DNA of 64,000 nucleotides from NCBI RefSeq assembly GCF_036321535.1, contig NC_087458.1, positions 5,766,001 through 5,830,000 of the forward strand, written 5' to 3'. This document shows positions 975 to 61,055 of this stretch, piece by piece. A program made the translations under genes and the position numbers. Origin of the DNA: Camelus dromedarius (lineage: Eukaryota). The notes under the pieces were generated by a model, which was given only the letters and a program-made list of their open reading frames with translations, was not told the origin of the DNA and ran no database searches. The number at the start of each line of letters is the position of its first letter. Position 1 is the first letter of the stretch.

Positions 975-1205
<231 letters not shown>

Positions 1206-3322: not shown

Positions 3323-3882
3323 CCCCCAGCCACCAGCCTCCCACAGACAAGATCCCTGTGTTGATCCCAGCCCCTCCTGCTGGATATTGAAAACATTTCA
3401 TTTCCGCAGGGCCAGAAACTGCCCTCAGCCTCCCATCCTCCAGTGGCCAGAGAGGAGCGAAGCCTCGGCAGGACTCTGACCTGACCCCAGCTATCCTCTC
3501 AGAAGAACCAAACAAAGCCAAGTGATGCCAGTTCTTTATTAGGAGAGAAACAGGACCTTTCTCGCCATGGTCTCATTCCTGCACATACTCTGTGGGCCTG
3601 GACAGTCTCAAAGCAGATCCCCGCCTCCAGCCAACATGGGCCACAGTGAGGAGGCAGCGGCTGGCTGCTCTACTGGTCACTCACTGAGATCCTTGGGGAG
3701 GTCCCCTCATGCCTCCTGGACTCACAGATAAATGGGTTCACAGATTAGGGGCAAACCTGGGAGATTCTGGATGGAGGGGACACGAGGAGGGAAGGGGAGC
3801 TGACAGACCCAGGACAGCTCAGGGCAGAGATGGAGCAGGTCCTAAGCAGACCCAGATCCCTGCCCCAGGGCAGCCCTGCCCA

Positions 3883-4047
3883 TTACTGAGAGCAGGGGGC
3901 TTCTGGGGGGCAGTTCTTGAAGTATTCGTGGCAGTAGATGCAGAGGCAGGCAAGCTTGTTCATGTACTCCGCGAAGTCCACCTGCTGATCTTTGTTGGTG
4001 TCCAGGACACTCATCAATTTATTGTAGTCACACTCCCGAAGGCCCGT
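3883..4047 (-). CDS. S100A3: S100A3 last coding exon (codons 48-101 plus stop)
   Basis: TGLRECDYNKLMSVLDTNKDQQVDFAEYMNKLACLCIYCHEYFKNCPPEAPCSQ*, with the S100A3-specific Cys-rich C-terminus. Acceptor GCACAG|ACG; AATAAA at 3535-3540. Confidence 0.96.
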   Translation of the reverse strand, partial: TGLRECDYNKLMSVLDTNKDQQVDFAEYMNKLACLCIYCHEYFKNCPPEAPCSQ

Positions 4048-4219
4048 CTGTGCAGGGCAGGGTTGAGGAGGGATGGGGAGGCAGGTTGAGGAGGACAGAA
4101 CAGTCTCGTACACACATTCAGCTTCCCTTCCACCATCCTGGGTGGTCCCGCTCAATCCACACCCCTTCTATTCTGGTAACTCACCTGTGTCCGTCCCCCT
4201 CCCAAGTCCTCCTTCTCAG

Positions 4220-4385
4220 GCCATTTACTGAGCACCTGCTCTGTGCTACTGAGTGCCTACTGTGTGTCAGGCATTCTTCCCAGTGCTGTCGCTAGGTCCT
4301 CCGAACAGCCCTGCCAGGCCACCCGTGTGATGATTGTCCTCCCATTTCACAGGTGGGGAAATTGAGATTCCTGCTGTGTTAACCC
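4220..4385. mobile_element. MIR/L2 fragment in S100A3 intron 2
   Basis: ATTTACTGAGCACCTGCT...CCCATTTCACAGGTGGGGAAATTGAG hallmark motifs. Confidence 0.6.
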
Positions 4386-4514
4386 GCTTCCTAGCACCCC
4401 CTCCCCACAATCCGGCCTCCACCCCCTGGCTGTCTGATTCTCAACTCATCTCCAGGTCTCTCTTTGCAGAGTCTTAGCAGTGCTTCCCGTGGGATGGTCA
4501 CCCCAGGTGCTCAC

Positions 4515-4655
4515 CGGGGTCCAGGTGGGCAGCTCCGTCTGTACCAGCTCCTTGAGCTCCGCCTGGCAGAGCGTATAATTGTCCCCGAAGCGCTCAGCAT
4601 GTCTCTGGAAGCTGGATATAATTGTAGCCAACGCCTGCTCCAGAGGACTGGTCAT
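4515..4655 (-). CDS. S100A3: S100A3 first coding exon (codons 1-47)
   Basis: [47 protein letters not shown]. Acceptor GACAG|TGAGGATG (exon starts 4660); donor CCG|GTGAGC at 4515/4514. Joined ORF is 101 aa, like human S100A3. Confidence 0.95.
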
Positions 4656-5591
4656 CCTCACTGTCACAGAACAGGGGTACGACTCAGGGCAGAGGCCATG
4701 TCAGCCCCCTGCTCCTCCCTGCCTTCCGTGTGTCCCAGGGACTGTGCCCAGATCTGACTTAATCTCCTCCAGGCTTCCAGCCCCACAAACTGCCCCTCCT
4801 CTGAGTAGCCCTCCCTGACTACACCAGCCCCTCCTCATCTATTTCCCGACTGTCCCCTCCACACTTGTTCTTCCCCTGGACCGAGGACTTTTTTCTCCCC
4901 AACATCATTGCAAACCCCTCAGGGAGAGTGGCCCACCCCCTAGCTGGCACACCCCACCCAGGGGCTTCCTGAGGACTCCCTGATTCTCTCCACCTTTTCT
5001 CACCCCAACACCCAGCGAGGGCTCAGTCCCACTCTGCACCACCCCATCAGACACAGGCCCTGGCCCTAGAAGCCTCCTCCCCTTCCGACCCCAGAGTTCC
5101 TTCTCTAGGAACCTGTACTAGGAGACCCTGGCCCCGTGTACCCCGTCCTCGGGCCCTTGGCAAGGCTGGGCATTCTCAGGGAGGGTCAGATCTCAGAAGA
5201 ACCCCCCACCTCACCAACACAGGTATGCACCTACCAATGTGTGATCTGCCCCACCTGAGGCCATCCCCCTGACCCCAGGGGTCTTGAGACAGAAGGCTCT
5301 GCAGAAGGGTACCCTGCTCTGTTAAAGGGGAAATCCTTCCTGGAATGGCCCACCCCCGCCATTCCACTGGCCCCACCCACCACCCTTCAGGGAGTTGCCT
5401 CCAGCCTGGGGAAACCATAAGGCAGCCAGGAAGGCATGTGTTGTTTCCATGTGAGCCCAATGACTCACGCCTGGTTCCCCCAGGGGACAGGAGTCCTGCA
5501 ACACGAGGCAGCCTGGGCCAGGGCTCTCTCCCTGATGTTTCCCCCTCTGCTGGGCCCTGTGGAGCAAATGGCCAGCCTGGTTGTGGCTGGC

Positions 5592-5611
5592 GGGGGGGGG
5601 GGGGGGGGGGG
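5592..5611 (+). repeat. G20 homopolymer in a G-rich tract upstream of S100A3
   Basis: 20 consecutive G followed by GGGGGAGGGGGAGGGG. Confidence 0.9.
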
Positions 5612-7599
5612 AGGTGCAGGGCTGGGGGAGGGGGAGGGGCCCTGCCCTGCCTGAGGTCTAACTGTCTGTGACAGCTCAGGATTGGGGCAGGGGGCAGGAA
5701 GGGTCGCGATGTCAGGGAACAGGGAACTGCAGAGGTGCCTGGCCGCCCTTCCCAGCTCCTGCCAGCCTGCCTGGCGCCACTGCTGTTGCTCTTTCAGAGG
5801 CTCCGTGCCTGGCAACCGGAAGGAGTCCTCTCCTCCGCAGGGCCCTAGCCCGTCTCAACCTGCTGACAGGAATGAAGGAGGCGGTGGGGGCAGGGAGGGT
5901 GATAGCAGCACCTTTAGCTTTTAGCTCATTGCCCGCGCCGCTCGGCCAGACCTCAGCTCTGCACACCCCCAAACCCAAGCTCCCCAACAACTCCTCGCTG
6001 TAAGAGGGCACCCCTGAATCCACCATATCTGATTCCCTTCGCCTCGTCAATCCCTGCTGTGGTCATCCCTCTGCCCCCTAGGCCAGACCCTGGGCCAGGA
6101 GCCGGACCCCGGCCACTCACCACCCAGCCCAGGGCAGGACCCAGGCAGCCGGCACTCACCCCCGGTGCTGGTGTTTCAGCTCTAAGAGCCCAGCCACAAG
6201 GCATCCCTATTTGTAGCTTTCCAAGGAGAGAAAGGAGCAATTATGGGGGTCCAAGTAGGTCAAGCTGAGGGTGTCCCCAGGGGTTCCCCTGCTTCCTTCC
6301 TTGGCAACCCCTATTACAGGCCCCACCCACCCACCTAGCCATGCACACATCAAAGGCCCACTCTGGGCTGCAGACACCACCACCTCTTCATTTTCCCTCT
6401 GCACAGCCTCCTGCCTGTCTCCTTCCAGTGAGCTTGGAAGAGACAAGTGATTCATCACAACCATCCTCTATCCCTTCACACTGAAGAGACACTCCAAAAG
6501 ACAAAGTGGGGACACACTCTAGCCTCACCCCCAGAGAATCCCCGTGCCAGAGGGGGTCTTGGAGGGCATCTGGTTAAGCCCCCTTATTTACGATGACAAC
6601 ACTGAGGCCATGAGACCACCTCCCTGCCTGATCTCCAGACCGATGGTGCTTGGCCGCTTTGGGCTGAGAACTGCTTCCTTCCCTGGGCAGATCGCCCGAG
6701 GGATGTCTTTGAGGCCTAGGAGGATATCCTAGGGGTGCTTCCAGAAGTCTAGGCTGCCTTCTCTTGGTTACCCCCCCCCCGACACCAAGTGCAGACTCAT
6801 GCCCGGGTGGCCTGTAGCCAGAGCTCCTCAGGCCTTTCCTGGCCCCCCTTGGCGCCAAGGCCGAGTTCCCTGCACTCCTGTGGGGTGGGGGTACATTGCC
6901 TCTGGGTTTTGGCTCAAGCAGGTAGCCCTGTGAGGTAGGAGGTGTCCCCCTTGTCTCCCCTCCTCAAATGGGCCCTTCCTCATGCCACAAACTGTCACAA
7001 ACTGTCAAAGCCAAAGGTCATTTGGGCTCGGTTTGGCCAATGCCCTCAGGGCCCAAGGGCCTCGGCACCCTGCCCACCTCCTGGAGTCTGCTTTCACTTA
7101 GATTATGATCTCCTCAATACTTGCTGCCTTGTGAGCTCGCCAATGCTTTGAAAAAAAATGTTTTTATTTTATCCAGATTTTTGGTTGTTCTTAGCTGCAG
7201 CCCGCACAAGCCACCATGTTAGCAGAAATGAAAATCCGTCGGTGTCATTTCCCTGTTCCCTCCCTCATCCCCAGGCCTGAGACACACACACCCCCCTCAC
7301 GTCACAGGAAGAGAAGGCAAGACCCAGCAGAGTGTGGGAGGGGGACGAGAAGTCAACACCCAGGCCTCTGAAGACCCCCAAATGCCCCTGGGGCAGCCAG
7401 AGAGCTCACGCCACCTGGACCTCACCCCGGGCCCCGCACCCAGAGCTCGCCTGTGCCAGCTCGCTGAAGACGCAGCCCCTGTGGGTGAAGGGAGTGGGCA
7501 GTGGGGAAGGCAAGGAGGGGAGAGCTGTGATTAACCTTGTTTTATAGGCAAGGAATTATGGGGAGTAGGGGACAGAGGTGGGGGCCAGAGTGGACCAGC

Positions 7600-14212: not shown

Positions 14213-14551
<339 letters not shown>

Positions 14552-15112
14552 CTAAGCACAGGATTCGCTCTACTCCCCACAGGAGCCCAGCGAGGTGGGC
14601 ATTACCCTCATCGGCTGATGAGGAAATGACAGTTTTCTGAGGCCACCGCCACTCCCCATCACCAGCAAAGTGAATTCAGAAAAGACACACCCTTTTTCAT
14701 GCCAGCCAAAATAAAATCAAATTAGACAAATGAGACCAAAAGAAACATTTAAAAAGAAAGGGCCTGTCTCAACGTTCAAAGCCTGAGACCTGACTTTGGG
14801 ATTCCCCAGGAGTCAGTAAGGGGAAGGCAAGGGGCAAACTGAGAGCTGACTGCGTCTCTCCGCAAAATGTCCCGGGGGGTGTGTCTTCGCTGGACTGCTC
14901 TCTCCTTACACACTTTTGTAGTTTGGCACATAAATATGGAAAATGAGAGAGAGAGAGGACACACACACACATGCTGTGCGATCATGAGCCAGTCACTTCC
15001 CCTCTCTGGGCTCTGAGAGTGCCTCCGTTCTCTGAGGCCATGAAGGGCCCGGCCCCACCCTGCTGTCTATGTCAGGAGGCACCCCAGAGGAAAGGAGAAT
15101 AGATTTATCCTA

Positions 15113-15472
<360 letters not shown>

Positions 15473-33689: not shown

Positions 33690-36600
33690 CCTGAGACAAA
33701 TGAAAATAAAAGCATAGCATACCAAAACATGAAATGCAGGAAAAGCAGTGCTAAGAGAGAAATTTATAGCAGTAAACATCTACATTAGAAAAAGAAGAAA
33801 GGGGATTTTTAAGGCAATAAAAGTACTCTGTATGATATTATAATGACAGATACATGTCATTATACATTTATCCAAATACATGTACCCGTAGAATGTACAA
33901 CACCAAGAATGGAATGTAATTGTAAGCTATGGACCTTGGGTGATTATGATGCGTCAAGGTGGCTTCATCTATTGTAACAAATGCACCACTCTGGTGGAAT
34001 ATGTTTATAATTGGGGAGGCTACACATGTGTCAGAGCAGGGAGTATATGAGAAATCTATATACCTTCTCCTAAATTTTGCTGTGAATTTAAAACTTCTCT
34101 TTAAAAAACTTAATAAAAATAAAAGAAAAAGAAAAGCAATATCAAATCTCAACCTAACTTTACTCCCCAGGGAACTAGAAAAGGAAAAAATTTAAATTTA
34201 AAGTTAGCAGAAGGAAGAAAGGAATAAATATCAGAGCGGAATAAAAGAAATAGAGAATTAACACAACAGAAAAAATCCAATAAACTAAGAGTAATTCTTA
34301 AAATACCAACAAATTTGACAAGTCTTTAGCTAGATTAACTAAGAAAAAAAAAAGAAGATTCAAATCGCTGAAGTCGGAAATGAAAGAGGAGACATTACAA
34401 CTGATGCCAGGGAAATACAAAGGATAATAAGACACTAGTGTGAACAATTATAAGCCAAAAATTTGGATAACCTAGACAAAATGGGTAACTTCTTAGAAAC
34501 ACAGAACCTACCAACACTGAATCATGAAGAATTAGAATTTCTGAACAGACTTATAATTAGTAAGGAGACTGAATCAGTAATCAAGAAAAAACCCAAACAA
34601 AGAAAAGCCCAAAACCAGATAGTTTCAATGCACTTTTCTATCAAACAATTAAAGAAAATTAACACCAATCCTTCTCAAACTCTTCCCAAAAGTTAAAGAG
34701 AANNNNNNNNNNNNNNNNNNNNNNNNNNNNNNNNNNNNNNNNNNNNNNNNNNNNNNNNNNNNNNNNNNNNNNNNNNNNNNNNNNNNNNNNNNNNNNNNNN
34801 NNNNNNNNNNNNNNNNNNNNNNNNNNNNNNNNNNNNNNNNNNNNNNNNNNNNNNNNNNNNNNNNNNNNNNNNNNNNNNNNNNNNNNNNNNNNNNNNNNNN
34901 NNNNNNNNNNNNNNNNNNNNNNNNNNNNNNNNNNNNNNNNNNNNNNNNNNNNNNNNNNNNNNNNNNNNNNNNNNNNNNNNNNNNNNNNNNNNNNNNNNNN
35001 NNNNNNNNNNNNNNNNNNNNNNNNNNNNNNNNNNNNNNNNNNNNNNNNNNNNNNNNNNNNNNNNNNNNNNNNNNNNNACCTCACCATAATGTAAGTCAAT
35101 CATAATGAAAAGCTCACAGTAAACATCATACTCAACAGTGAAAAACAGAAGACTTCTCCTCTAAGATCAGGGACAAGGCAAAGATGCCCACTTTTACCAC
35201 TTCTGTTCAGTGTAATACTGGAGTCCTAGCCAAAGCAATTAGGCAATGAAAATAAATAAAAGGCATCCACATGGGGAAAGAAGAACTAAAATTATCTCTG
35301 TTCCCAGATGACATAATCTTATATGTGCAAAACCTAGAGATTCCACAAAGAAATTGTTAGAACTAANNNNNNNNNNNNNNNNNNNNNNNNNNNNNNNNNN
35401 NNNNNNNNNNNNNNNNNNNNNNNNNNNNNNNNNNNNNNNNNNNNNNNNNNNNNNNNNNNNNNNNNNNNNNNNNNNNNNNNNNNNNNNNNNNNNNNNNNNN
35501 NNNNNAGTAATTAACTTAACCAAGGAGGAAAAAGACTTGTACATTGAGAACTACAAAACATTGTTGAAAGAAACTAAAGAAAGCACAAATAAAGGGAAAG
35601 ACATCCTATGTTCATGGATTGGAAGACTTAATATTATTAAAATGTCCACACTATCCAAAGTCATCTATAGATTAAATGCAATCCCTATCAAGATTCCAAT
35701 GGAATTTTTTTGGAAGAAGAAAAAAACTATCCTAAAATTCATATGGAACCTCAAATGACCTCAAATAGCCCAAAAAATCTTGAGAAAGAGCAAAGCTGAA
35801 GCCCTTACACTTCCTGATTTCAAAACATTTTACAAAGCTACAGTAATCAAAACAGTCTGGAACTGGCAAAAAGACAGACATACAGACCAATGGAACAGAA
35901 CGGAGAATGCAGAAATACACCTTCACATACATGGTCGAGTGATTTTTCAACAAGGATGCNNNNNNNNNNNNNNNNNNNNNNNNNNNNNNNNNNNNNNNNN
36001 NNNNNNNNNNNNNNNNNNNNNNNNNNNNNNNNNNNNNNNNNNNNNNNNNNNNNNNNNNNNNNNNNNNNNNNNNNNNNNNNNNNNNNNNNNNNNNNNNNNN
36101 NNNNNNNNNNNNNNNNNNNNNNNNNNNNNNNNNNNNNNNAGAGGAAAATCCTCATGACCTTGTAATGAGTGACGATTTCGTGGCTATGTCACCAAACACA
36201 GGTAACAAAAGCAAAAATAGGCAAATGGGATTACATTAAGCTTAAAAACTTCTGTGGGAAAAAATCAACAGAGTGAAAAGGTAACGTACAGGATGGGAGA
36301 AAATATTTGTAAACCATATATCAGATAAGGGGTTAATATCCAGGACATAAAGAACTACAACTCAATTACAAAAAAAAACCAAAATGAAAGAACAACAACA
36401 ACAAAAACATTTATAAATGGGCAAAGGAGCTGAATAAACATTTCTCCAAAGTAGATACACAAATGGTCAAGAAACATGTGAAAAGATGCTCAACGTCACT
36501 AATCATCAGGGAAATGCAAATTTAAAACAAATAAGGTATAATCTCACACTCATTAGGATGACCCCTATAAAACAAACAAACAAGAAAACAGAAAATAACA

Positions 36601-37265
36601 AGTATTGGTAAGCATGTGGAGAAATTGGAACATTTGTGCACTGTTGGTGGGAATGTAAAATAGTGCATCCACTATGGAAAATAGTATGGTGTGTCCTCAG
36701 ATTTTTAGCAGTAGAACTACTATATACCCAGCAATCCCATGTTTGGATTTACATTGAAAATATCTGAAAACAGGATCTTGAAAAGAAACTAGCACTCCAT
36801 GTTCATTGAAGCATTATTCACAATAGGCAAGATCTAGAAGCANNNNNNNNNNNNNNNNNNNNNNNNNNNNNNNNNNNNNNNNNNNNNNNNNNNNNNNNNN
36901 NNNNNNNNNNNNNNNNNNNNNNNNNNNNNNNNNNNNNNNNNNNNNNNNNNNNNNNNNNNNNNNNNNNNNNNNNNNNNNNNNNNNNNNNNNNNNNNNNNNN
37001 NNNNNNNNNNNNNNNNNNNNNNNNNNNNNNNNNNNNNNNNNNNNNNNNNNNNNNNNNNNNNNNNNNNNNNNNNNNNNNNNNNNNNNNNNNNNNNNNNNNN
37101 NNNATGGGGAGTTGTTATTGAACGAGTACAGAGGTTCAGTCCTGTAAGATGAAAAATTTCTGGAGATCTGCTGTACAACCATGTGCATGTAGTTAACAGT
37201 ACTGTAATGTGCATTTAAAATTTGTTAAGAAGGTAAATTGATGTTGTGTGTGTTTTTATCACAAA
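33690..37265 (+). mobile_element. 5'-truncated L1MB-type LINE-1 (degenerate ORF2 plus 3' UTR), four N runs, with a nested L1MC-like 3' end at about 33805-34120
   Basis: ORF2 peptides [21 protein letters not shown]...[12 protein letters not shown] and [32 protein letters not shown]; 3' end ATGGGGAGTTGTTATTGAA...TTCTGGAGATCTG; frameshifts and stops present. Confidence 0.9.
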
Positions 37266-38665: not shown

Positions 38666-38824
38666 CTAGCTGCTGCTCAGCTGCTCCTGCTGGCGGATGA
38701 GGTTGGCGATGGGGCTGGTGATGCCGCCTATCAAGGTCCAGTACTCATCAAAGCTGATGCGCCCGTCGTGATTGGCATCCAGGTTCTGGATGAGCTTGTC
38801 AGCAGCCTTTCGGTTCCCCGTGTC
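38666..38824 (-). CDS. S100A16: S100A16 last coding exon (codons 52-103 plus stop)
   Basis: Translated by hand: DTGNRKAADKLIQNLDANHDGRISFDEYWTLIGGITSPIANLIRQQEQLSSS*. Acceptor CTCCCCAG|GAC; AATAAA at 38173-38178. Confidence 0.96.
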   Translation of the reverse strand, partial: DTGNRKAADKLIQNLDANHDGRISFDEYWTLIGGITSPIANLIRQQEQLSSS

Positions 38825-39133
38825 CTGGGGAGGAATCAGGGGTGAGCAGGGCTGAGGGTGGCAGCTCCGCAGAGCACCCCCTGCAGGACCCTAGGCAGAG
38901 TCCAGGGTCCGGCTGGGCAGCTGCTGCCCTTGGGGAAAAGGGAATAGAGCCCTCAGCGGCTCAGTCCTGGGCACCTGAGAACAGAGGCCTGGATGGGGTT
39001 GAGACCCTGGTTTGGGGGGATAACTCTGAAAGGACAGAGGCAGTGGTGGGGAAGGACACCCAGAGAGGACAAGGGCTTTCGGAGCTGGGGAAGGAGGGGG
39101 CGAGAAGGCCAAGCCCTCAGATAGGGCCCCCAC

Positions 39134-39286
39134 CGTCAGCATGTGGTTGAGCTCTTTCTGAAGCATCTTCCGGAAGCTGCTCTTGCTGATCTTGTTCTTA
39201 ACCAGGCTGTATTTGGACACGTATTTGTAGAAGTTCTCCACCAGGACGACGACCGCCTTCTCCAGCTCCGTGTAGCTGTCCGCCAT
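39134..39286 (-). CDS. S100A16: S100A16 first coding exon (codons 1-51)
   Basis: MADSYTELEKAVVVLVENFYKYVSKYSLVKNKISKSSFRKMLQKELNHMLT. Donor ACG|GTGGGG; probable acceptor CCCAG| at 39313. Confidence 0.97.
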
Positions 39287-46280: not shown

Positions 46281-46420
46281 NNNNNNNNNNNNNNNNNNNN
46301 NNNNNNNNNNNNNNNNNNNNNNNNNNNNNNNNNNNNNNNNNNNNNNNNNNNNNNNNNNNNNNNNNNNNNNNNNNNNNNNNNNNNNNNNNNNNNNNNNNNN
46401 NNNNNNNNNNNNNNNNNNNN
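46281..46420. other. N run (others at 34703-35077, 35367-35505, 35960-36139, 36843-37103)
   Basis: Direct reading. Confidence 0.99.
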
Positions 46421-55536: not shown

Positions 55537-55689
55537 CTTGAGCAGGTGAGGCAACTGCTGAGTGACCAGCTCCTTGAACTCATCGATGCTGAGGCTGCCC
55601 TTCCGGCCCTCCCGCCCTGCAAAGGTGAAGAAGGTGGTAACCACTGTCTCGATGGCCACCTCCAGCTCGGTCAGTGGCTCAGCTGCCAT
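55537..55689 (-). CDS. S100A13: S100A13 first coding exon (codons 1-51)
   Basis: MAAEPLTELEVAIETVVTTFFTFAGREGRKGSLSIDEFKELVTQQLPHLLK. Donor AAG|GTGAGT; acceptor CCTCCTGCAG| at 55730. Joined ORF is 98 aa. Confidence 0.97.
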
Positions 55690-59808: not shown

Positions 59809-59949
59809 ATGGGCTCTGAGCTGGAGACGGCGATGGAGACTCTCATCAACGTGTTCCATGCCCACTCGGGCAAGGAAGGGGACAAGTACAAGCTGAGCAA
59901 GAAGGAGCTGAAAGAGCTGCTGCGGACGGAGCTCTCCGGCTTCCTGGAC
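59809..59949 (+). CDS. S100A1: S100A1 first coding exon (codons 1-47)
   Basis: [47 protein letters not shown]; donor GAC|GTGAGC. Confidence 0.97.
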
Positions 59950-60911
59950 GTGAGCACAGGGTCGGGGTACGGGGTGGAGTGGGCGAGTGGTGGGGGAACA
60001 GAGTGGGCACCTCCCTGCCATCTCCCGACCCCATCCTGGCTCAGCCCAGTCATCTCCTTCCTCTCCCAGGCTCCCCTTACTCCTCCTGGTTCAAATCAAA
60101 ATGCCCTATTTACTGATCACCTGTTAAGTGCTAGGCCCCATGTAGATGCATCAGTAACAAGGCTCACAGTCTAGAAGGGAAAAACTGACACTTGAAAGTA
60201 AACCTTGAACATCAGGAAGCACGCAGAGCCTTAACAGAGGTGCCGGAAAGGCTTATGGGAGAATATTAACCTGACTGAAGTGGGACGGCTTCTCCAAAGA
60301 GGTGGCACCTGAGCCATAGATTTCCACTGGAAAATTATTAGGGTAACTGTAGCTATCTTAGGAGAAGGTACATTATGGAAACAAGAGCATGGGGGGAAAG
60401 ATGGAGCATGCTTAGTAGTTGTGACTGGACTGAAGGATGCAGAAAAGGAGAAGCCAGAAGAAAGTGCACCAGCTTTGAGGTTTTATTAGACCCAGGTTCA
60501 AATTCTGACGCTGCCACTTTCTAGCTGTGTGACTTCGGGCACATTATTTCACCAACAACTGTGAATTTGTCTTTTCTCTAGAATAGCAATAATGAAACCA
60601 GCTTCATACTATGTTAGAATTAAATTAGACATTGCTTGTAAAGCTCCTAGTGTAGTGTTTGCCACATGGTAGGCACTCAACATATGGTAATTGATGTTCT
60701 TATTACTCTGCCTTGTTAAGCTTATTCCGTAGGCAACAGGAAGCCACAAGTGTTTCAGTTTTGAGGAGGGCAGCAAGAGTCCCATAGTTAGATGAAGTTC
60801 TCCCTCCTCCCCATCTCTGCCTCCTTCTCCCCAATGAGCTACCCACCACGTCCCTAACTCAGTGATATTCATCTTCCTATACACCGACCTCTCCATCTCC
60901 TCCCTGCACAG

Positions 60912-61055
60912 ACCCAGAAGGATGCGGATGCTGTGGACAAGGTGATGAAGGAGCTAGATGAGAATGGAGATGGGGAGGTGGACTTCCAGGAGTACGTAGT
61001 GCTGGTGGCTGCCCTCACTGTGGCCTGTAACAACTTCTTCTGGGAGAACAGCTGA
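60912..61055 (+). CDS. S100A1: S100A1 last coding exon
   Basis: TQKDADAVDKVMKELDENGDGEVDFQEYVVLVAALTVACNNFFWENS*. Acceptor CCCTGCACAG|ACC; ATTAAA at 61207-61212. Confidence 0.97.
   Translation, partial: TQKDADAVDKVMKELDENGDGEVDFQEYVVLVAALTVACNNFFWENS

What the first reader, a model, noticed from the sequence alone, without database searches (positions are those of the whole stretch)
3883..4655. S100A3 has lost Cys68, one half of the Cys30-Cys68 disulfide, and Cys14 and Cys23
Seen: codon 68 is CAG (Gln, 3985-3987) in loop DTNKDQQVDFAE, position 14 is Ser and position 23 is Phe, leaving 7 Cys (30, 53, 81, 83, 86, 93, 99). Established: human S100A3, a hair-cuticle protein, has 10 Cys, disulfides Cys30-Cys68 and Cys81-Cys99, a Cys83/Cys86/His87/Cys93 Zn site, and Arg51 citrullinated by PAD3. 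From my recollection of the structural work, disrupting Cys30-Cys68 impairs Ca2+ binding and slows citrullination. Arg51, the Zn ligands and Cys81/Cys99 are all kept here. Inference: this lineage may use a rewired S100A3 with a free Cys30 and a more canonical, S100A2-like second EF loop, which is relevant to camelid fibre cuticle biology.
Basis: partly seen in the sequence, partly recalled or inferred. Interest (0 to 1): 0.75.

Follow-up and report, generated by a model that had tools for sequence, protein, structure and literature searches.

The report
Camel S100A3 lacks the Cys68 disulfide partner
The camel gene for the hair-cuticle protein S100A3 really encodes glutamine where the human protein has the disulfide-forming Cys68, but mammals have replaced this cysteine independently about nine times (pig, sheep and goat, weasels, lemurs, some bats), so it is a recurrent variant and not a camelid speciality.

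Summary
The minus-strand S100A3 gene (coding exons 4515-4655 and 3883-4047) encodes a 101-residue protein identical to NCBI's Camelus S100-A3. It has Ser14, Phe23 and Gln68 (CAG, 3985-3987) and seven Cys. Arg51, Cys30, Cys81/Cys99 and Cys83/Cys86/His87/Cys93 are kept.

It is not an assembly error. Alpaca has the same CAG. DNA contigs from two organism labels match. Spliced RNA contigs from two studies cover the codon unchanged.

In 98 mammalian S100A3 sequences, residue 68 is Cys in 83 and Gly, Gln, Asn, Arg or His in 15. With extra bat, mole-rat and cetacean sequences, that makes about nine independent lineages: camelids, pig, sheep/goat/oryx, mustelids, horseshoe and fruit bats, lemurs, gundi, African mole-rats and some dolphins. 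Gln68 (CAG) also arose in Mustela and in lemurs. Cys14 and Cys23 are missing in about 35-40% of species, so their loss is ordinary.

Every Cys68-less protein outside cetaceans keeps Cys30, Arg51 and all Ca2+-ligand positions of the EF loop. Most replacement residues are those that S100 paralogs carry at loop position 6. The best reading is a functional S100A3 that works without the Cys30-Cys68 bridge. Biochemistry is untested. Interest is modest.

The parts
5469..5558 (-). S100A3 non-coding 5' exon. The donor is at 5469. The upstream limit is uncertain because the contigs end beside a poly-C repeat.
   Evidence: RNA contigs in X15 and X17 join 4660 to 5469, skipping 808 nt with GT..AG on the minus strand. 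Sequence read.
4515..4660 (-). S100A3 exon with the start codon (ATG 4653-4655). Encodes residues 1-47, the pseudo-EF-hand, with Ser14, Phe23 and Cys30.
   Evidence: Translation. Match to human S100A3 PDB chains at E 2.5e-15. Exon limits from RNA joints.
4048..4514 (-). Intron of 467 nt, phase 0, between codons 47 and 48.
   Evidence: GT..AG read. Skipped in RNA contigs of two studies. Same length in alpaca.
3529..4047 (-). Last exon. Encodes residues 48-101, with stop TAA at 3883-3885 and a 3'UTR down to about 3529.
   Evidence: Translation. PDB S100A3 match at E 2.3e-25. RNA contigs span 3529-4047.
3967..4002 (-). Canonical EF-hand loop, residues 63-74 (DTNKDQQVDFAE). The ligand positions Asp63, Asn65, Asp67, Asp71 and Glu74 are intact.
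3985..3987 (-). Codon 68, CAG = Gln (EF-loop position 6), where human and most mammals have Cys.
   Evidence: Unchanged in DNA and RNA contigs.
4614..4616 (-). Codon 14, TCC = Ser (Cys in human).
4587..4589 (-). Codon 23, TTC = Phe (Cys in human). Phe here is seen only in the two camelids among 98 sequences.
4566..4568 (-). Codon 30, TGC = Cys30, retained but without its Cys68 partner.
4036..4038 (-). Codon 51, CGG = Arg51, the PAD3 target residue in the human protein, retained.
   Evidence: Arg51 as target: PMC7014782.
3892..3948 (-). C-terminal Cys/His cluster: Cys81, Cys83, Cys86, His87, Cys93 and Cys99, all retained.
3535..3540 (-). AATAAA polyadenylation signal just upstream of the end of the RNA contigs.

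Best explanation
This is the intact, transcribed camel ortholog of S100A3. In it Cys68, which is position 6 of the canonical EF-hand loop and the partner of Cys30 in the human SS1 disulfide, became Gln in the camelid stem lineage. The change needed all three bases of the codon (TGC to CAG). It is one of about nine independent replacements of Cys68 in mammals. Most of these ended at a residue that other S100 proteins carry at loop position 6 (Gly, Gln, Asn). Inferred mechanism: the protein is still a Ca2+/Zn2+-binding S100A3 and a PAD3 substrate whose second EF hand works as an ordinary, S100A2-like loop without the redox-dependent Cys30-Cys68 bridge, which leaves Cys30 as a free thiol. On this reading SS1 is a dispensable feature of some lineages, not a defining feature of mammalian S100A3. 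Shown: sequence, orthology, fixation in camelids, splicing and transcription, recurrence in other mammals, retention of all ligand residues. Inferred: retained Ca2+ binding, citrullination and a cuticle role.
For: Orthology:
- 100% identity to NCBI Camelus S100-A3.
- Best PDB match is S100A3.
- Pfam S_100 domain.
- The gene lies between an S100A4 exon (1041-1181) and S100A2 (14219-15307).

Real and fixed:
- The same CAG is in alpaca.
- DNA contigs under two organism labels and spliced RNA contigs from two studies cover the codon unchanged.

Still constrained:
- The ORF is intact in both camelid tribes.
- Camelus vs Vicugna shows 2 synonymous and 2 nonsynonymous changes (w about 0.25). Nonsynonymous divergence is 0.8% against 2.1-2.6% in the intron and flanks.

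Recurrence:
- Residue 68 is non-Cys in 15 of 98 sequences (G7, Q5, N1, R1, H1).
- The identical CAG is present in Mustela and Propithecus. CGT (Arg, otter) and CAT (His, aye-aye) occur in their sister lineages, which suggests a stepwise Cys-Arg-His-Gln path.
- The loss also occurs in slowly evolving backgrounds: pig differs from the majority consensus at 9 positions and horseshoe bats at 7.
- All 15 keep Cys30, Arg51 and the loop ligands at positions 63, 65, 67, 71 and 74.

Paralog residues at loop position 6: Gln in S100A2, Gly in S100A1 and S100A16 (window), Asn in S100A4.

S100A3 is listed among fibre proteins that differ in abundance between cashmere, wool and guard fibre of sheep and goats, whose S100A3 has Gly68 (PMC9539809).
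Against: - By my recollection of Unno et al. 2011 (cited in PMC7014782; the text is not held), the human C30A+C68A double mutant lost Ca2+ binding and was citrullinated more slowly. A natural SS1-less protein could likewise bind Ca2+ poorly. PDB 3NSL does carry Ala68.
- Camelid S100A3 is fast-evolving: 28 of 101 positions differ from the mammalian majority against a median of 12. The changes include usually conserved sites (Y19H, K40T, R77N). The three-taxon dN of the camelid branch is about 0.14 against 0.03 for pig. Some relaxation is therefore possible.
- The constraint test between the camelids has little power (p about 0.07, my Poisson estimate).
- The tissue of the RNA runs is unknown, so cuticle expression is not shown.
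- No biochemistry exists for any Cys68-less ortholog.
Confidence: 0.7

Rival explanations
1. Camelid-specific adaptive rewiring. Loss of Cys68, Cys14 and Cys23 was selected in camelids to change the redox or Ca2+ behaviour of S100A3 in a way that shapes camelid fibre cuticle.
For: Gln68, Ser14 and Phe23 are fixed in both camelid tribes. The camelid stem carries many substitutions, several at otherwise conserved sites. Reaching CAG needed three base changes.
Against: The same or equivalent change occurs in about eight other lineages with very different coats, including pig, horseshoe bats, weasels, lemurs, gundi and mole-rats. Cys14 and Cys23 are absent in 35-40% of species. The synonymous rate on the camelid branch is also raised, so w is about 0.5 and not above 1. 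No link to any fibre trait was found in the searchable literature.
Confidence: 0.1
2. Relaxed constraint or functional decay. Camelid S100A3 is drifting. Losing SS1 reduced or abolished Ca2+ binding, as in the human C30A+C68A mutant, and the protein survives only as a Cys-rich Zn-binding or structural component, or is on its way to loss.
For: Divergence from the mammalian majority is high (28/101). Pairwise w of 0.3-0.5 against other orders is high for an S100 gene. The human double-mutant result points the same way (recollection; 3NSL carries Ala68). Cetaceans, which carry degenerate S100A3 genes, also show Arg68 in some species (co-loss with PAD3 is stated in PMC7014782).
Against: The ORF, the splice sites, Arg51, all EF-loop ligands and the whole C-terminal Cys/His cluster are intact in both tribes. 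Nonsynonymous divergence between the tribes is about one third of the non-coding divergence. Spliced mRNA is present. Most replacement residues are the ones typical of loop position 6 in S100 paralogs, and the single-step neighbours Ser, Tyr, Phe and Trp are never seen.
Confidence: 0.15
3. The CAG codon was copied from a paralog. A very short gene-conversion tract from S100A2 (GAC CAG GAG GTG GAC TTC) or a local templated event produced the CAG CAG tandem at codons 68-69 in one step.
For: All three bases of the codon differ from TGC. S100A2, 10 kb away on the same strand, has CAG at the homologous codon within identical flanking bases (GTG GAC TTC). The result is a CAG CAG repeat.
Against: There is no tract outside the codon. 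Identity of the 90-nt segment to camel S100A2 is 55/90 in camel against 54/90 in pig S100A3, and codon 69 keeps C where S100A2 has G. Mustelids and lemurs show Arg and His intermediates, so a stepwise path to CAG exists.
Confidence: 0.05
4. Assembly or sequencing error at codon 68.
For: None found.
Against: The codon is identical in an independent alpaca assembly, in 14 DNA runs from 8 studies, in laid DNA contigs under two organism labels and in RNA contigs from two studies.
Confidence: 0.01

Closest known systems
Human S100A3 (PDB 1KSO, 3NSI, 3NSO)
   Same: 101 residues with the same two coding exons. About 70% identical (the primate rows). Arg51, Cys30, Cys53, Cys81, Cys83, Cys86, His87, Cys93 and Cys99 are conserved, and so are all EF-loop ligand positions.
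   Different: Ser14, Phe23 and Gln68 replace Cys, giving 7 Cys instead of 10, so the Cys30-Cys68 disulfide cannot form. There are further changes at usually conserved sites (Y19H, K40T, R77N).
Human S100A3 C30A+C68A mutant (PDB 3NSL)
   Same: It also lacks the SS1 bridge. Ala68 is seen in the chain sequence.
   Different: The camel protein keeps Cys30 and has Gln at loop position 6, a residue used there by S100A2, where the mutant has Ala. The mutant's loss of Ca2+ binding is my recollection of Unno et al. 2011 and may not transfer.
S100A2 (window 14219-15307; PDB 2RGI, 4DUQ)
   Same: The second EF loop has Asp-Gln at positions 5-6 followed by x-Val-Asp-Phe ([12 protein letters not shown] against DTNKDQQVDFAE). 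No disulfide crosses the two loops.
   Different: It is a different paralog. It lacks the C-terminal CLCxYCH...C...C cluster and Arg51 of S100A3.
S100A3 of pig, sheep, goat, oryx (Gly68), Mustela and lemurs (Gln68), otters (Arg68) and African mole-rats (Asn68)
   Same: These are natural orthologs without Cys68 that keep Cys30, Arg51 and the loop ligands. Mustela and Propithecus have the identical CAG codon.
   Different: The origins are independent. Ruminants also lack Cys93, carry a two-codon deletion in the pseudo-EF loop and have Lys33, whereas camelids keep all of these in the common state.

Membership tests
S100A3 ortholog | S-100/ICaBP domain followed by a canonical EF-hand | tested here: met
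   Pfam PF01023 at E 4.5e-15, above its cut-off. The EF-loop consensus is present.
S100A3 ortholog | Closer to S100A3 than to any other S100 paralog | tested here: met
   PDB S100A3 chains score 90 and 58 bits. The next single-protein chain is S100A4, at 42 and 38 bits.
S100A3 ortholog | Position in the S100A cluster between S100A4 and S100A2, on the same strand | tested here: met
   S100A4 exon at 1041-1181 (-), S100A3 at 3883-4655 (-), S100A2 at 14219-15307 (-). The human gene order is from my own knowledge.
S100A3 ortholog | Two coding exons split by a phase-0 intron after codon 47 | tested here: met
   The same structure is seen in alpaca, pig, otter, Mustela and lemurs, and after codon 45 in ruminants. 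It is confirmed by RNA joints.
S100A3 ortholog | C-terminal Cys/His cluster (Cys83, Cys86, His87, Cys99 invariant or nearly so; Cys81 and Cys93 common) | tested here: met
   All six residues are present in camel. Cys83, Cys86 and Cys99 are found in 98/98 sequences and His87 in 97/98.
S100A3 ortholog | Arg51, the PAD3 citrullination site | tested here: met
   CGG at 4036-4038. Arg in 96/98 sequences. Citrullination itself was not tested.
Human-type S100A3 disulfide pattern | SS1: Cys30 paired with Cys68 | tested here: not met
   Residue 68 is Gln. One of the two SS1 cysteines is also missing in 18 of 98 mammalian sequences: 15 lack Cys68 and 3 lack Cys30.
Human-type S100A3 disulfide pattern | SS2: Cys81 paired with Cys99 | tested here: inconclusive
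   Both cysteines are present. Formation of the bond cannot be tested with these tools.
Human-type S100A3 disulfide pattern | Ten cysteines, including Cys14 and Cys23 | tested here: not met
   Seven Cys. Ser14 and Phe23.
Hair-cuticle S100A3 function | Expression in hair cuticle, Ca2+/Zn2+ binding, PAD3-driven tetramerisation | not testable with these tools
   Spliced mRNA exists in RNA libraries of unknown tissue. No biochemical data are available.
Canonical EF-hand loop | Acidic or Asn ligands at loop positions 1, 3, 5, 9 and 12, and a residue at position 6 that paralogs also use | tested here: met
   Asp63, Asn65, Asp67, Asp71, Glu74, with Gln68 at position 6 as in S100A2.

The most novel reading that the evidence does not exclude
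Replacing Cys68 with a paralog-like loop residue (Gly, Gln or Asn) is a convergent, selected change that makes the second EF hand of S100A3 canonical again. It would free Ca2+ binding and PAD3-dependent tetramerisation from the redox state of the maturing cuticle. On this reading it arose about nine times in mammals, three times reaching the same CAG codon, and the SS1-dependent mechanism worked out for the human protein is a lineage-specific special case.
Probability: 0.2. Interest if true: 0.5.

Novelty: new variant of a known kind. Interest (0 to 1): 0.3.

Why it matters
The only mechanistic model of S100A3 comes from the human protein. In that model the Cys30-Cys68 bridge is described as necessary for Ca2+ binding and efficient citrullination (my recollection of Unno et al. 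2011).

The survey here shows that the bridge cannot form in about one in six sampled mammalian S100A3 sequences. These include the main fibre animals (camel, alpaca, sheep, goat) and pig. Cys83, Cys86, His87, Cys99 and Arg51, by contrast, are practically invariant.

This gives ready-made natural variants for testing which features of the human model are general. It also argues against reading the camel sequence as a camelid-specific fibre adaptation.

The finding is amino-acid variation in an annotated ortholog, not a new system.

Tried and rejected
- **Exon-only protein search.** It returned only the camel protein itself. The full-length queries and the cluster listings gave the orthologs.
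- **Assembly error.** Rejected.
- **Gene conversion from S100A2.** No tract beyond the codon. Kept only as a low-probability account of how the CAG arose.
- **Cys68 loss as a mere side-effect of fast evolution.** Rejected, because pig, horseshoe bats and otters lost it in slowly evolving proteins.
- **Hairlessness as the cause of Asn68 in the naked mole-rat.** Weakened, because the furred Fukomys shares Asn68.
- **Literature.** No held paper mentions S100A3 together with Cys68 or Cys30. Unno et al. 2011, Minato/Unno/Kitano 2019 (Gene 713:143975) and Ite et al. 2020 are not held. Whether Cys68 variation has already been described there could not be checked. The camel/alpaca paper search gave nothing on S100A3.
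- **Scan notebook.** It held only this same finding.
- **DNA look-ups.** The dog look-up and the first Propithecus look-up were not sent because the queue was full. Only the Propithecus one was repeated. The naked mole-rat protein is not on record by exact sequence.
- **Not run.** Structure prediction and complex prediction, because sequence evidence already settles family and fold and no coordinates are returned that could measure the 30-68 geometry.
- **Operator rules.** N stretches of the window were left untouched.

Full report
**What is there.** On the minus strand of the window lies a three-exon gene.
- The reading frame starts at ATG 4653-4655 and runs to 4515 (47 codons). It is interrupted by a 467-nt GT..AG intron (4048-4514) and resumes at 4047, ending at TAA 3883-3885.
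- The joined product of 101 residues is identical to the protein that NCBI names S100-A3 in Camelus dromedarius and C. ferus (P0001).
- It carries the Pfam S_100 domain.
- Both halves match the human S100A3 chains of the PDB far better than any other S100 paralog.
- The neighbours are an S100A4 exon at 1041-1181 and S100A2 at 14219-15307 on the same strand. S100A16 and S100A1 lie further on. Orthology to S100A3 is therefore secure.

**Check of the observation.** Against human S100A3 (1KSO) the camel protein has Ser14 (TCC), Phe23 (TTC) and Gln68 (CAG, 3985-3987). The codon is not an artefact.
- An independent alpaca assembly has the same CAG (L001).
- Fourteen DNA runs from eight studies hold every sampled word of the stretch.
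- Laid DNA contigs under two organism labels show no difference in the coding sequence.
- RNA contigs from two studies cover codon 68 unchanged. They join 4047 to 4515 and 4660 to 5469, which shows that the gene is spliced and transcribed and has a non-coding 5' exon at about 5469-5558.
- The only coding variant seen is a synonymous one in codon 28 (4572 C>T in one RNA run).
- An AATAAA signal at 3535-3540 sits just before the end of the RNA contigs.

**How unusual the change is.** I collected 98 mammalian S100A3 sequences from the hits and their 90% clusters and tabulated the key positions. Residue 68 is Cys in 83, Gly in 7, Gln in 5, and Asn, Arg and His in one each.

The non-Cys lineages, combining with the extra sequences, are:
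- Camelidae (Gln);
- pig (Gly);
- sheep, goat and oryx (Gly), while cattle, buffalo and deer keep Cys;
- mustelids (Mustela Gln, otters Arg);
- horseshoe, leaf-nosed and fruit bats (Gly);
- lemurs (Propithecus and Microcebus Gln, aye-aye His);
- the gundi (Gly);
- African mole-rats (Heterocephalus and Fukomys, Asn);
- some dolphins and porpoises (Arg). Their predicted proteins look degenerate, in line with the reported co-loss of S100A3 and PAD3 function in cetaceans (PMC7014782).

Judged against the accepted mammalian phylogeny (my own knowledge), this is about nine independent events. Three of the cetartiodactyl groups sampled are affected: Camelidae, Suidae and part of Bovidae.

Cys14 is present in only 63 of 98 sequences and Cys23 in 59 of 98, so their absence in camelids is ordinary. 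Phe at position 23 is, however, unique to camelids in this sample. Cys30 is kept in all 15 Cys68-less proteins. The three species that lack Cys30 (pika, sloth, wallaby) keep Cys68. The SS1 pair is therefore incomplete in 18 of 98 sequences.

**Codon paths.**
- Pig and goat have GGC, one step from the TGC seen in cattle.
- Camelids have CAG, three steps away.
- Mustela and Propithecus have the same CAG. Their relatives, the otters and the aye-aye, have CGT (Arg) and CAT (His). This suggests a stepwise Cys-Arg-His-Gln route that was completed three times.
- I looked for a conversion tract from the window's S100A2, which has CAG at the homologous codon, and found none outside the codon: 55/90 identical bases in camel against 54/90 in pig.

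**Signs of retained function.**
- Camelus and Vicugna differ by two synonymous and two nonsynonymous changes (w about 0.25). Nonsynonymous divergence is 0.8%, against 2.1% in the intron and 2.6% in the flanks. Power is low: by my Poisson estimate, two or fewer changes where 5.9 are expected has p about 0.07.
- All 15 Cys68-less proteins keep the loop ligands at positions 63, 65, 67, 71 and 74, together with Arg51.
- The replacement residues seen in the survey are Gly, Gln, Asn, Arg and His. The single-step neighbours Ser, Tyr, Phe and Trp are never seen. Gly, reached by a transversion, was fixed four times. Under equal single-step probabilities, four or more Gly in nine events has p about 0.03. 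This is a rough figure.
- Most of the replacements match what paralogs carry at EF-loop position 6: Gln in S100A2, Gly in S100A1 and S100A16, Asn in S100A4.
- Cys68 was also lost in slowly evolving S100A3 proteins (pig, horseshoe bats, otters), so the loss is not merely a by-product of decay.
- A sheep and goat fibre proteome lists S100A3 among fibre proteins (PMC9539809), and Ovis and Capra S100A3 have Gly68.

**Caveats.**
- Camelid S100A3 is among the faster-evolving orthologs. It differs from the mammalian majority at 28 of 101 positions, against a median of 12. Only ruminants are clearly higher.
- From the pairwise values, the camelid branch has dN about 0.14 against 0.03 for pig, with otter as outgroup. 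The synonymous distance is raised as well, giving w about 0.5 on very few sites.
- The functional claim about SS1 rests on Unno et al. 2011. I could cite that paper only through reference lists and recall from memory. The PDB confirms that a C68A chain (3NSL) and an R51A chain (3NSK) were solved.
- Minato, Unno and Kitano 2019, on the evolution of S100A3 and PAD3, is not held. It may already describe some of this variation.
- The tissue of the RNA runs is coded, so expression in hair cuticle is not shown.

**Verdict.** The idea that this marks a camelid-specific rewiring relevant to camelid fibre is not supported, because the loss of Cys68 recurs across mammals and the losses of Cys14 and Cys23 are commonplace.

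The most likely mechanism is an S100A3 whose canonical EF hand works without the inter-loop disulfide (confidence about 0.7, inferred). The main alternative is partial functional relaxation in camelids (about 0.15). The wider point is that the human SS1 bridge, and in muroid and hystricognath rodents also SS2, is not a conserved feature of S100A3, whereas Cys83, Cys86, His87, Cys99 and Arg51 are. That point is modestly interesting and directly testable with recombinant proteins.

Noticed in passing
alignment of 98 S100A3 sequences; camel codons 81-99 at window 3892-3948: Cys93, which is counted among the Zn ligands of the human protein, is replaced in 22 of 98 sequences (Ser in ruminants, Val in cats, Gly in horses). 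Cys99 is invariant. Cys81 is replaced in muroid rodents (Ser), hystricognaths (Arg) and tenrecs, so the Cys81-Cys99 bridge cannot form in mouse either. The invariant set is Cys83, Cys86 and Cys99, with His87 in 97 of 98.
   Followed up: partly
alignment A2, ruminant rows; loci L004-L007: Ruminant S100A3 has a two-codon deletion in the pseudo-EF-hand loop (camel residues 26-27). It also has Lys-Phe in place of Glu33-Leu34, so the conserved Glu at position 33 is changed.
   Followed up: no
window 5235-5318, 5770-5857, 6158-6220 (minus strand): RNA contigs show further upstream pieces joined to the S100A3 5' exon or to each other (joints 4660/5235, 5318/5469, 5555/5770, 5857/6158). These may be alternative 5' exons or upstream transcripts. 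The 5555/5770 joint has non-canonical ends.
   Followed up: no
window 5578-5651: A long poly-C/G tract lies just upstream of the S100A3 5' exon. The reads tool skipped it as a repeat, and the contigs end there.
   Followed up: no
L009:664-924 (Logan contig of run SRR16767793): A mouse-like genomic S100A3 fragment (P0037, 16 cluster members) has Leu68 (TTA) where Mus has Cys. The species of the run is not known to me.
   Followed up: partly
P0189, P0190, P0192-P0194, P0209: The cetacean 'S100-A3' predictions look degenerate. They show a changed N-terminus, PCWRQV in the pseudo-EF loop, Arg51 changed to Gln or Trp in two dolphins, His87 to Arg in some, and altered C-termini. This is consistent with the reported loss of function in cetaceans.
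   Followed up: partly
P0019 (Ovis hybrid), P0186 (Fukomys), P0041 (Camelus ferus, 205 aa), P0056 (Capra, 215 aa): P0019 and P0186 are fused S100A3-S100A4 products, probably from read-through gene models between the two adjacent genes. P0041 and P0056 have lengths that would fit the same kind of fusion, but I did not read their sequences.
   Followed up: no
window 34703-37103 and 46281-46420: Five runs of N (1095 bases in all) lie between S100A2 and S100A16 and beyond.
   Followed up: no
window 1041-1181, 14219-15307, 38744-39265, 55540-55665, 59809-61040: The window holds much of the S100A cluster: an S100A4 exon whose 47 residues are 100% identical to the sheep protein, S100A2, S100A16, one further S100 exon (A13 or A14) and S100A1 on the plus strand.
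   Followed up: partly
L003 (Logan contig of run DRR831799): A pig contig, apparently a transcript because it has no intron, carries the uninterrupted S100A3 CDS with Gly68. The Cys68-less pig gene therefore appears to be expressed.
   Followed up: partly
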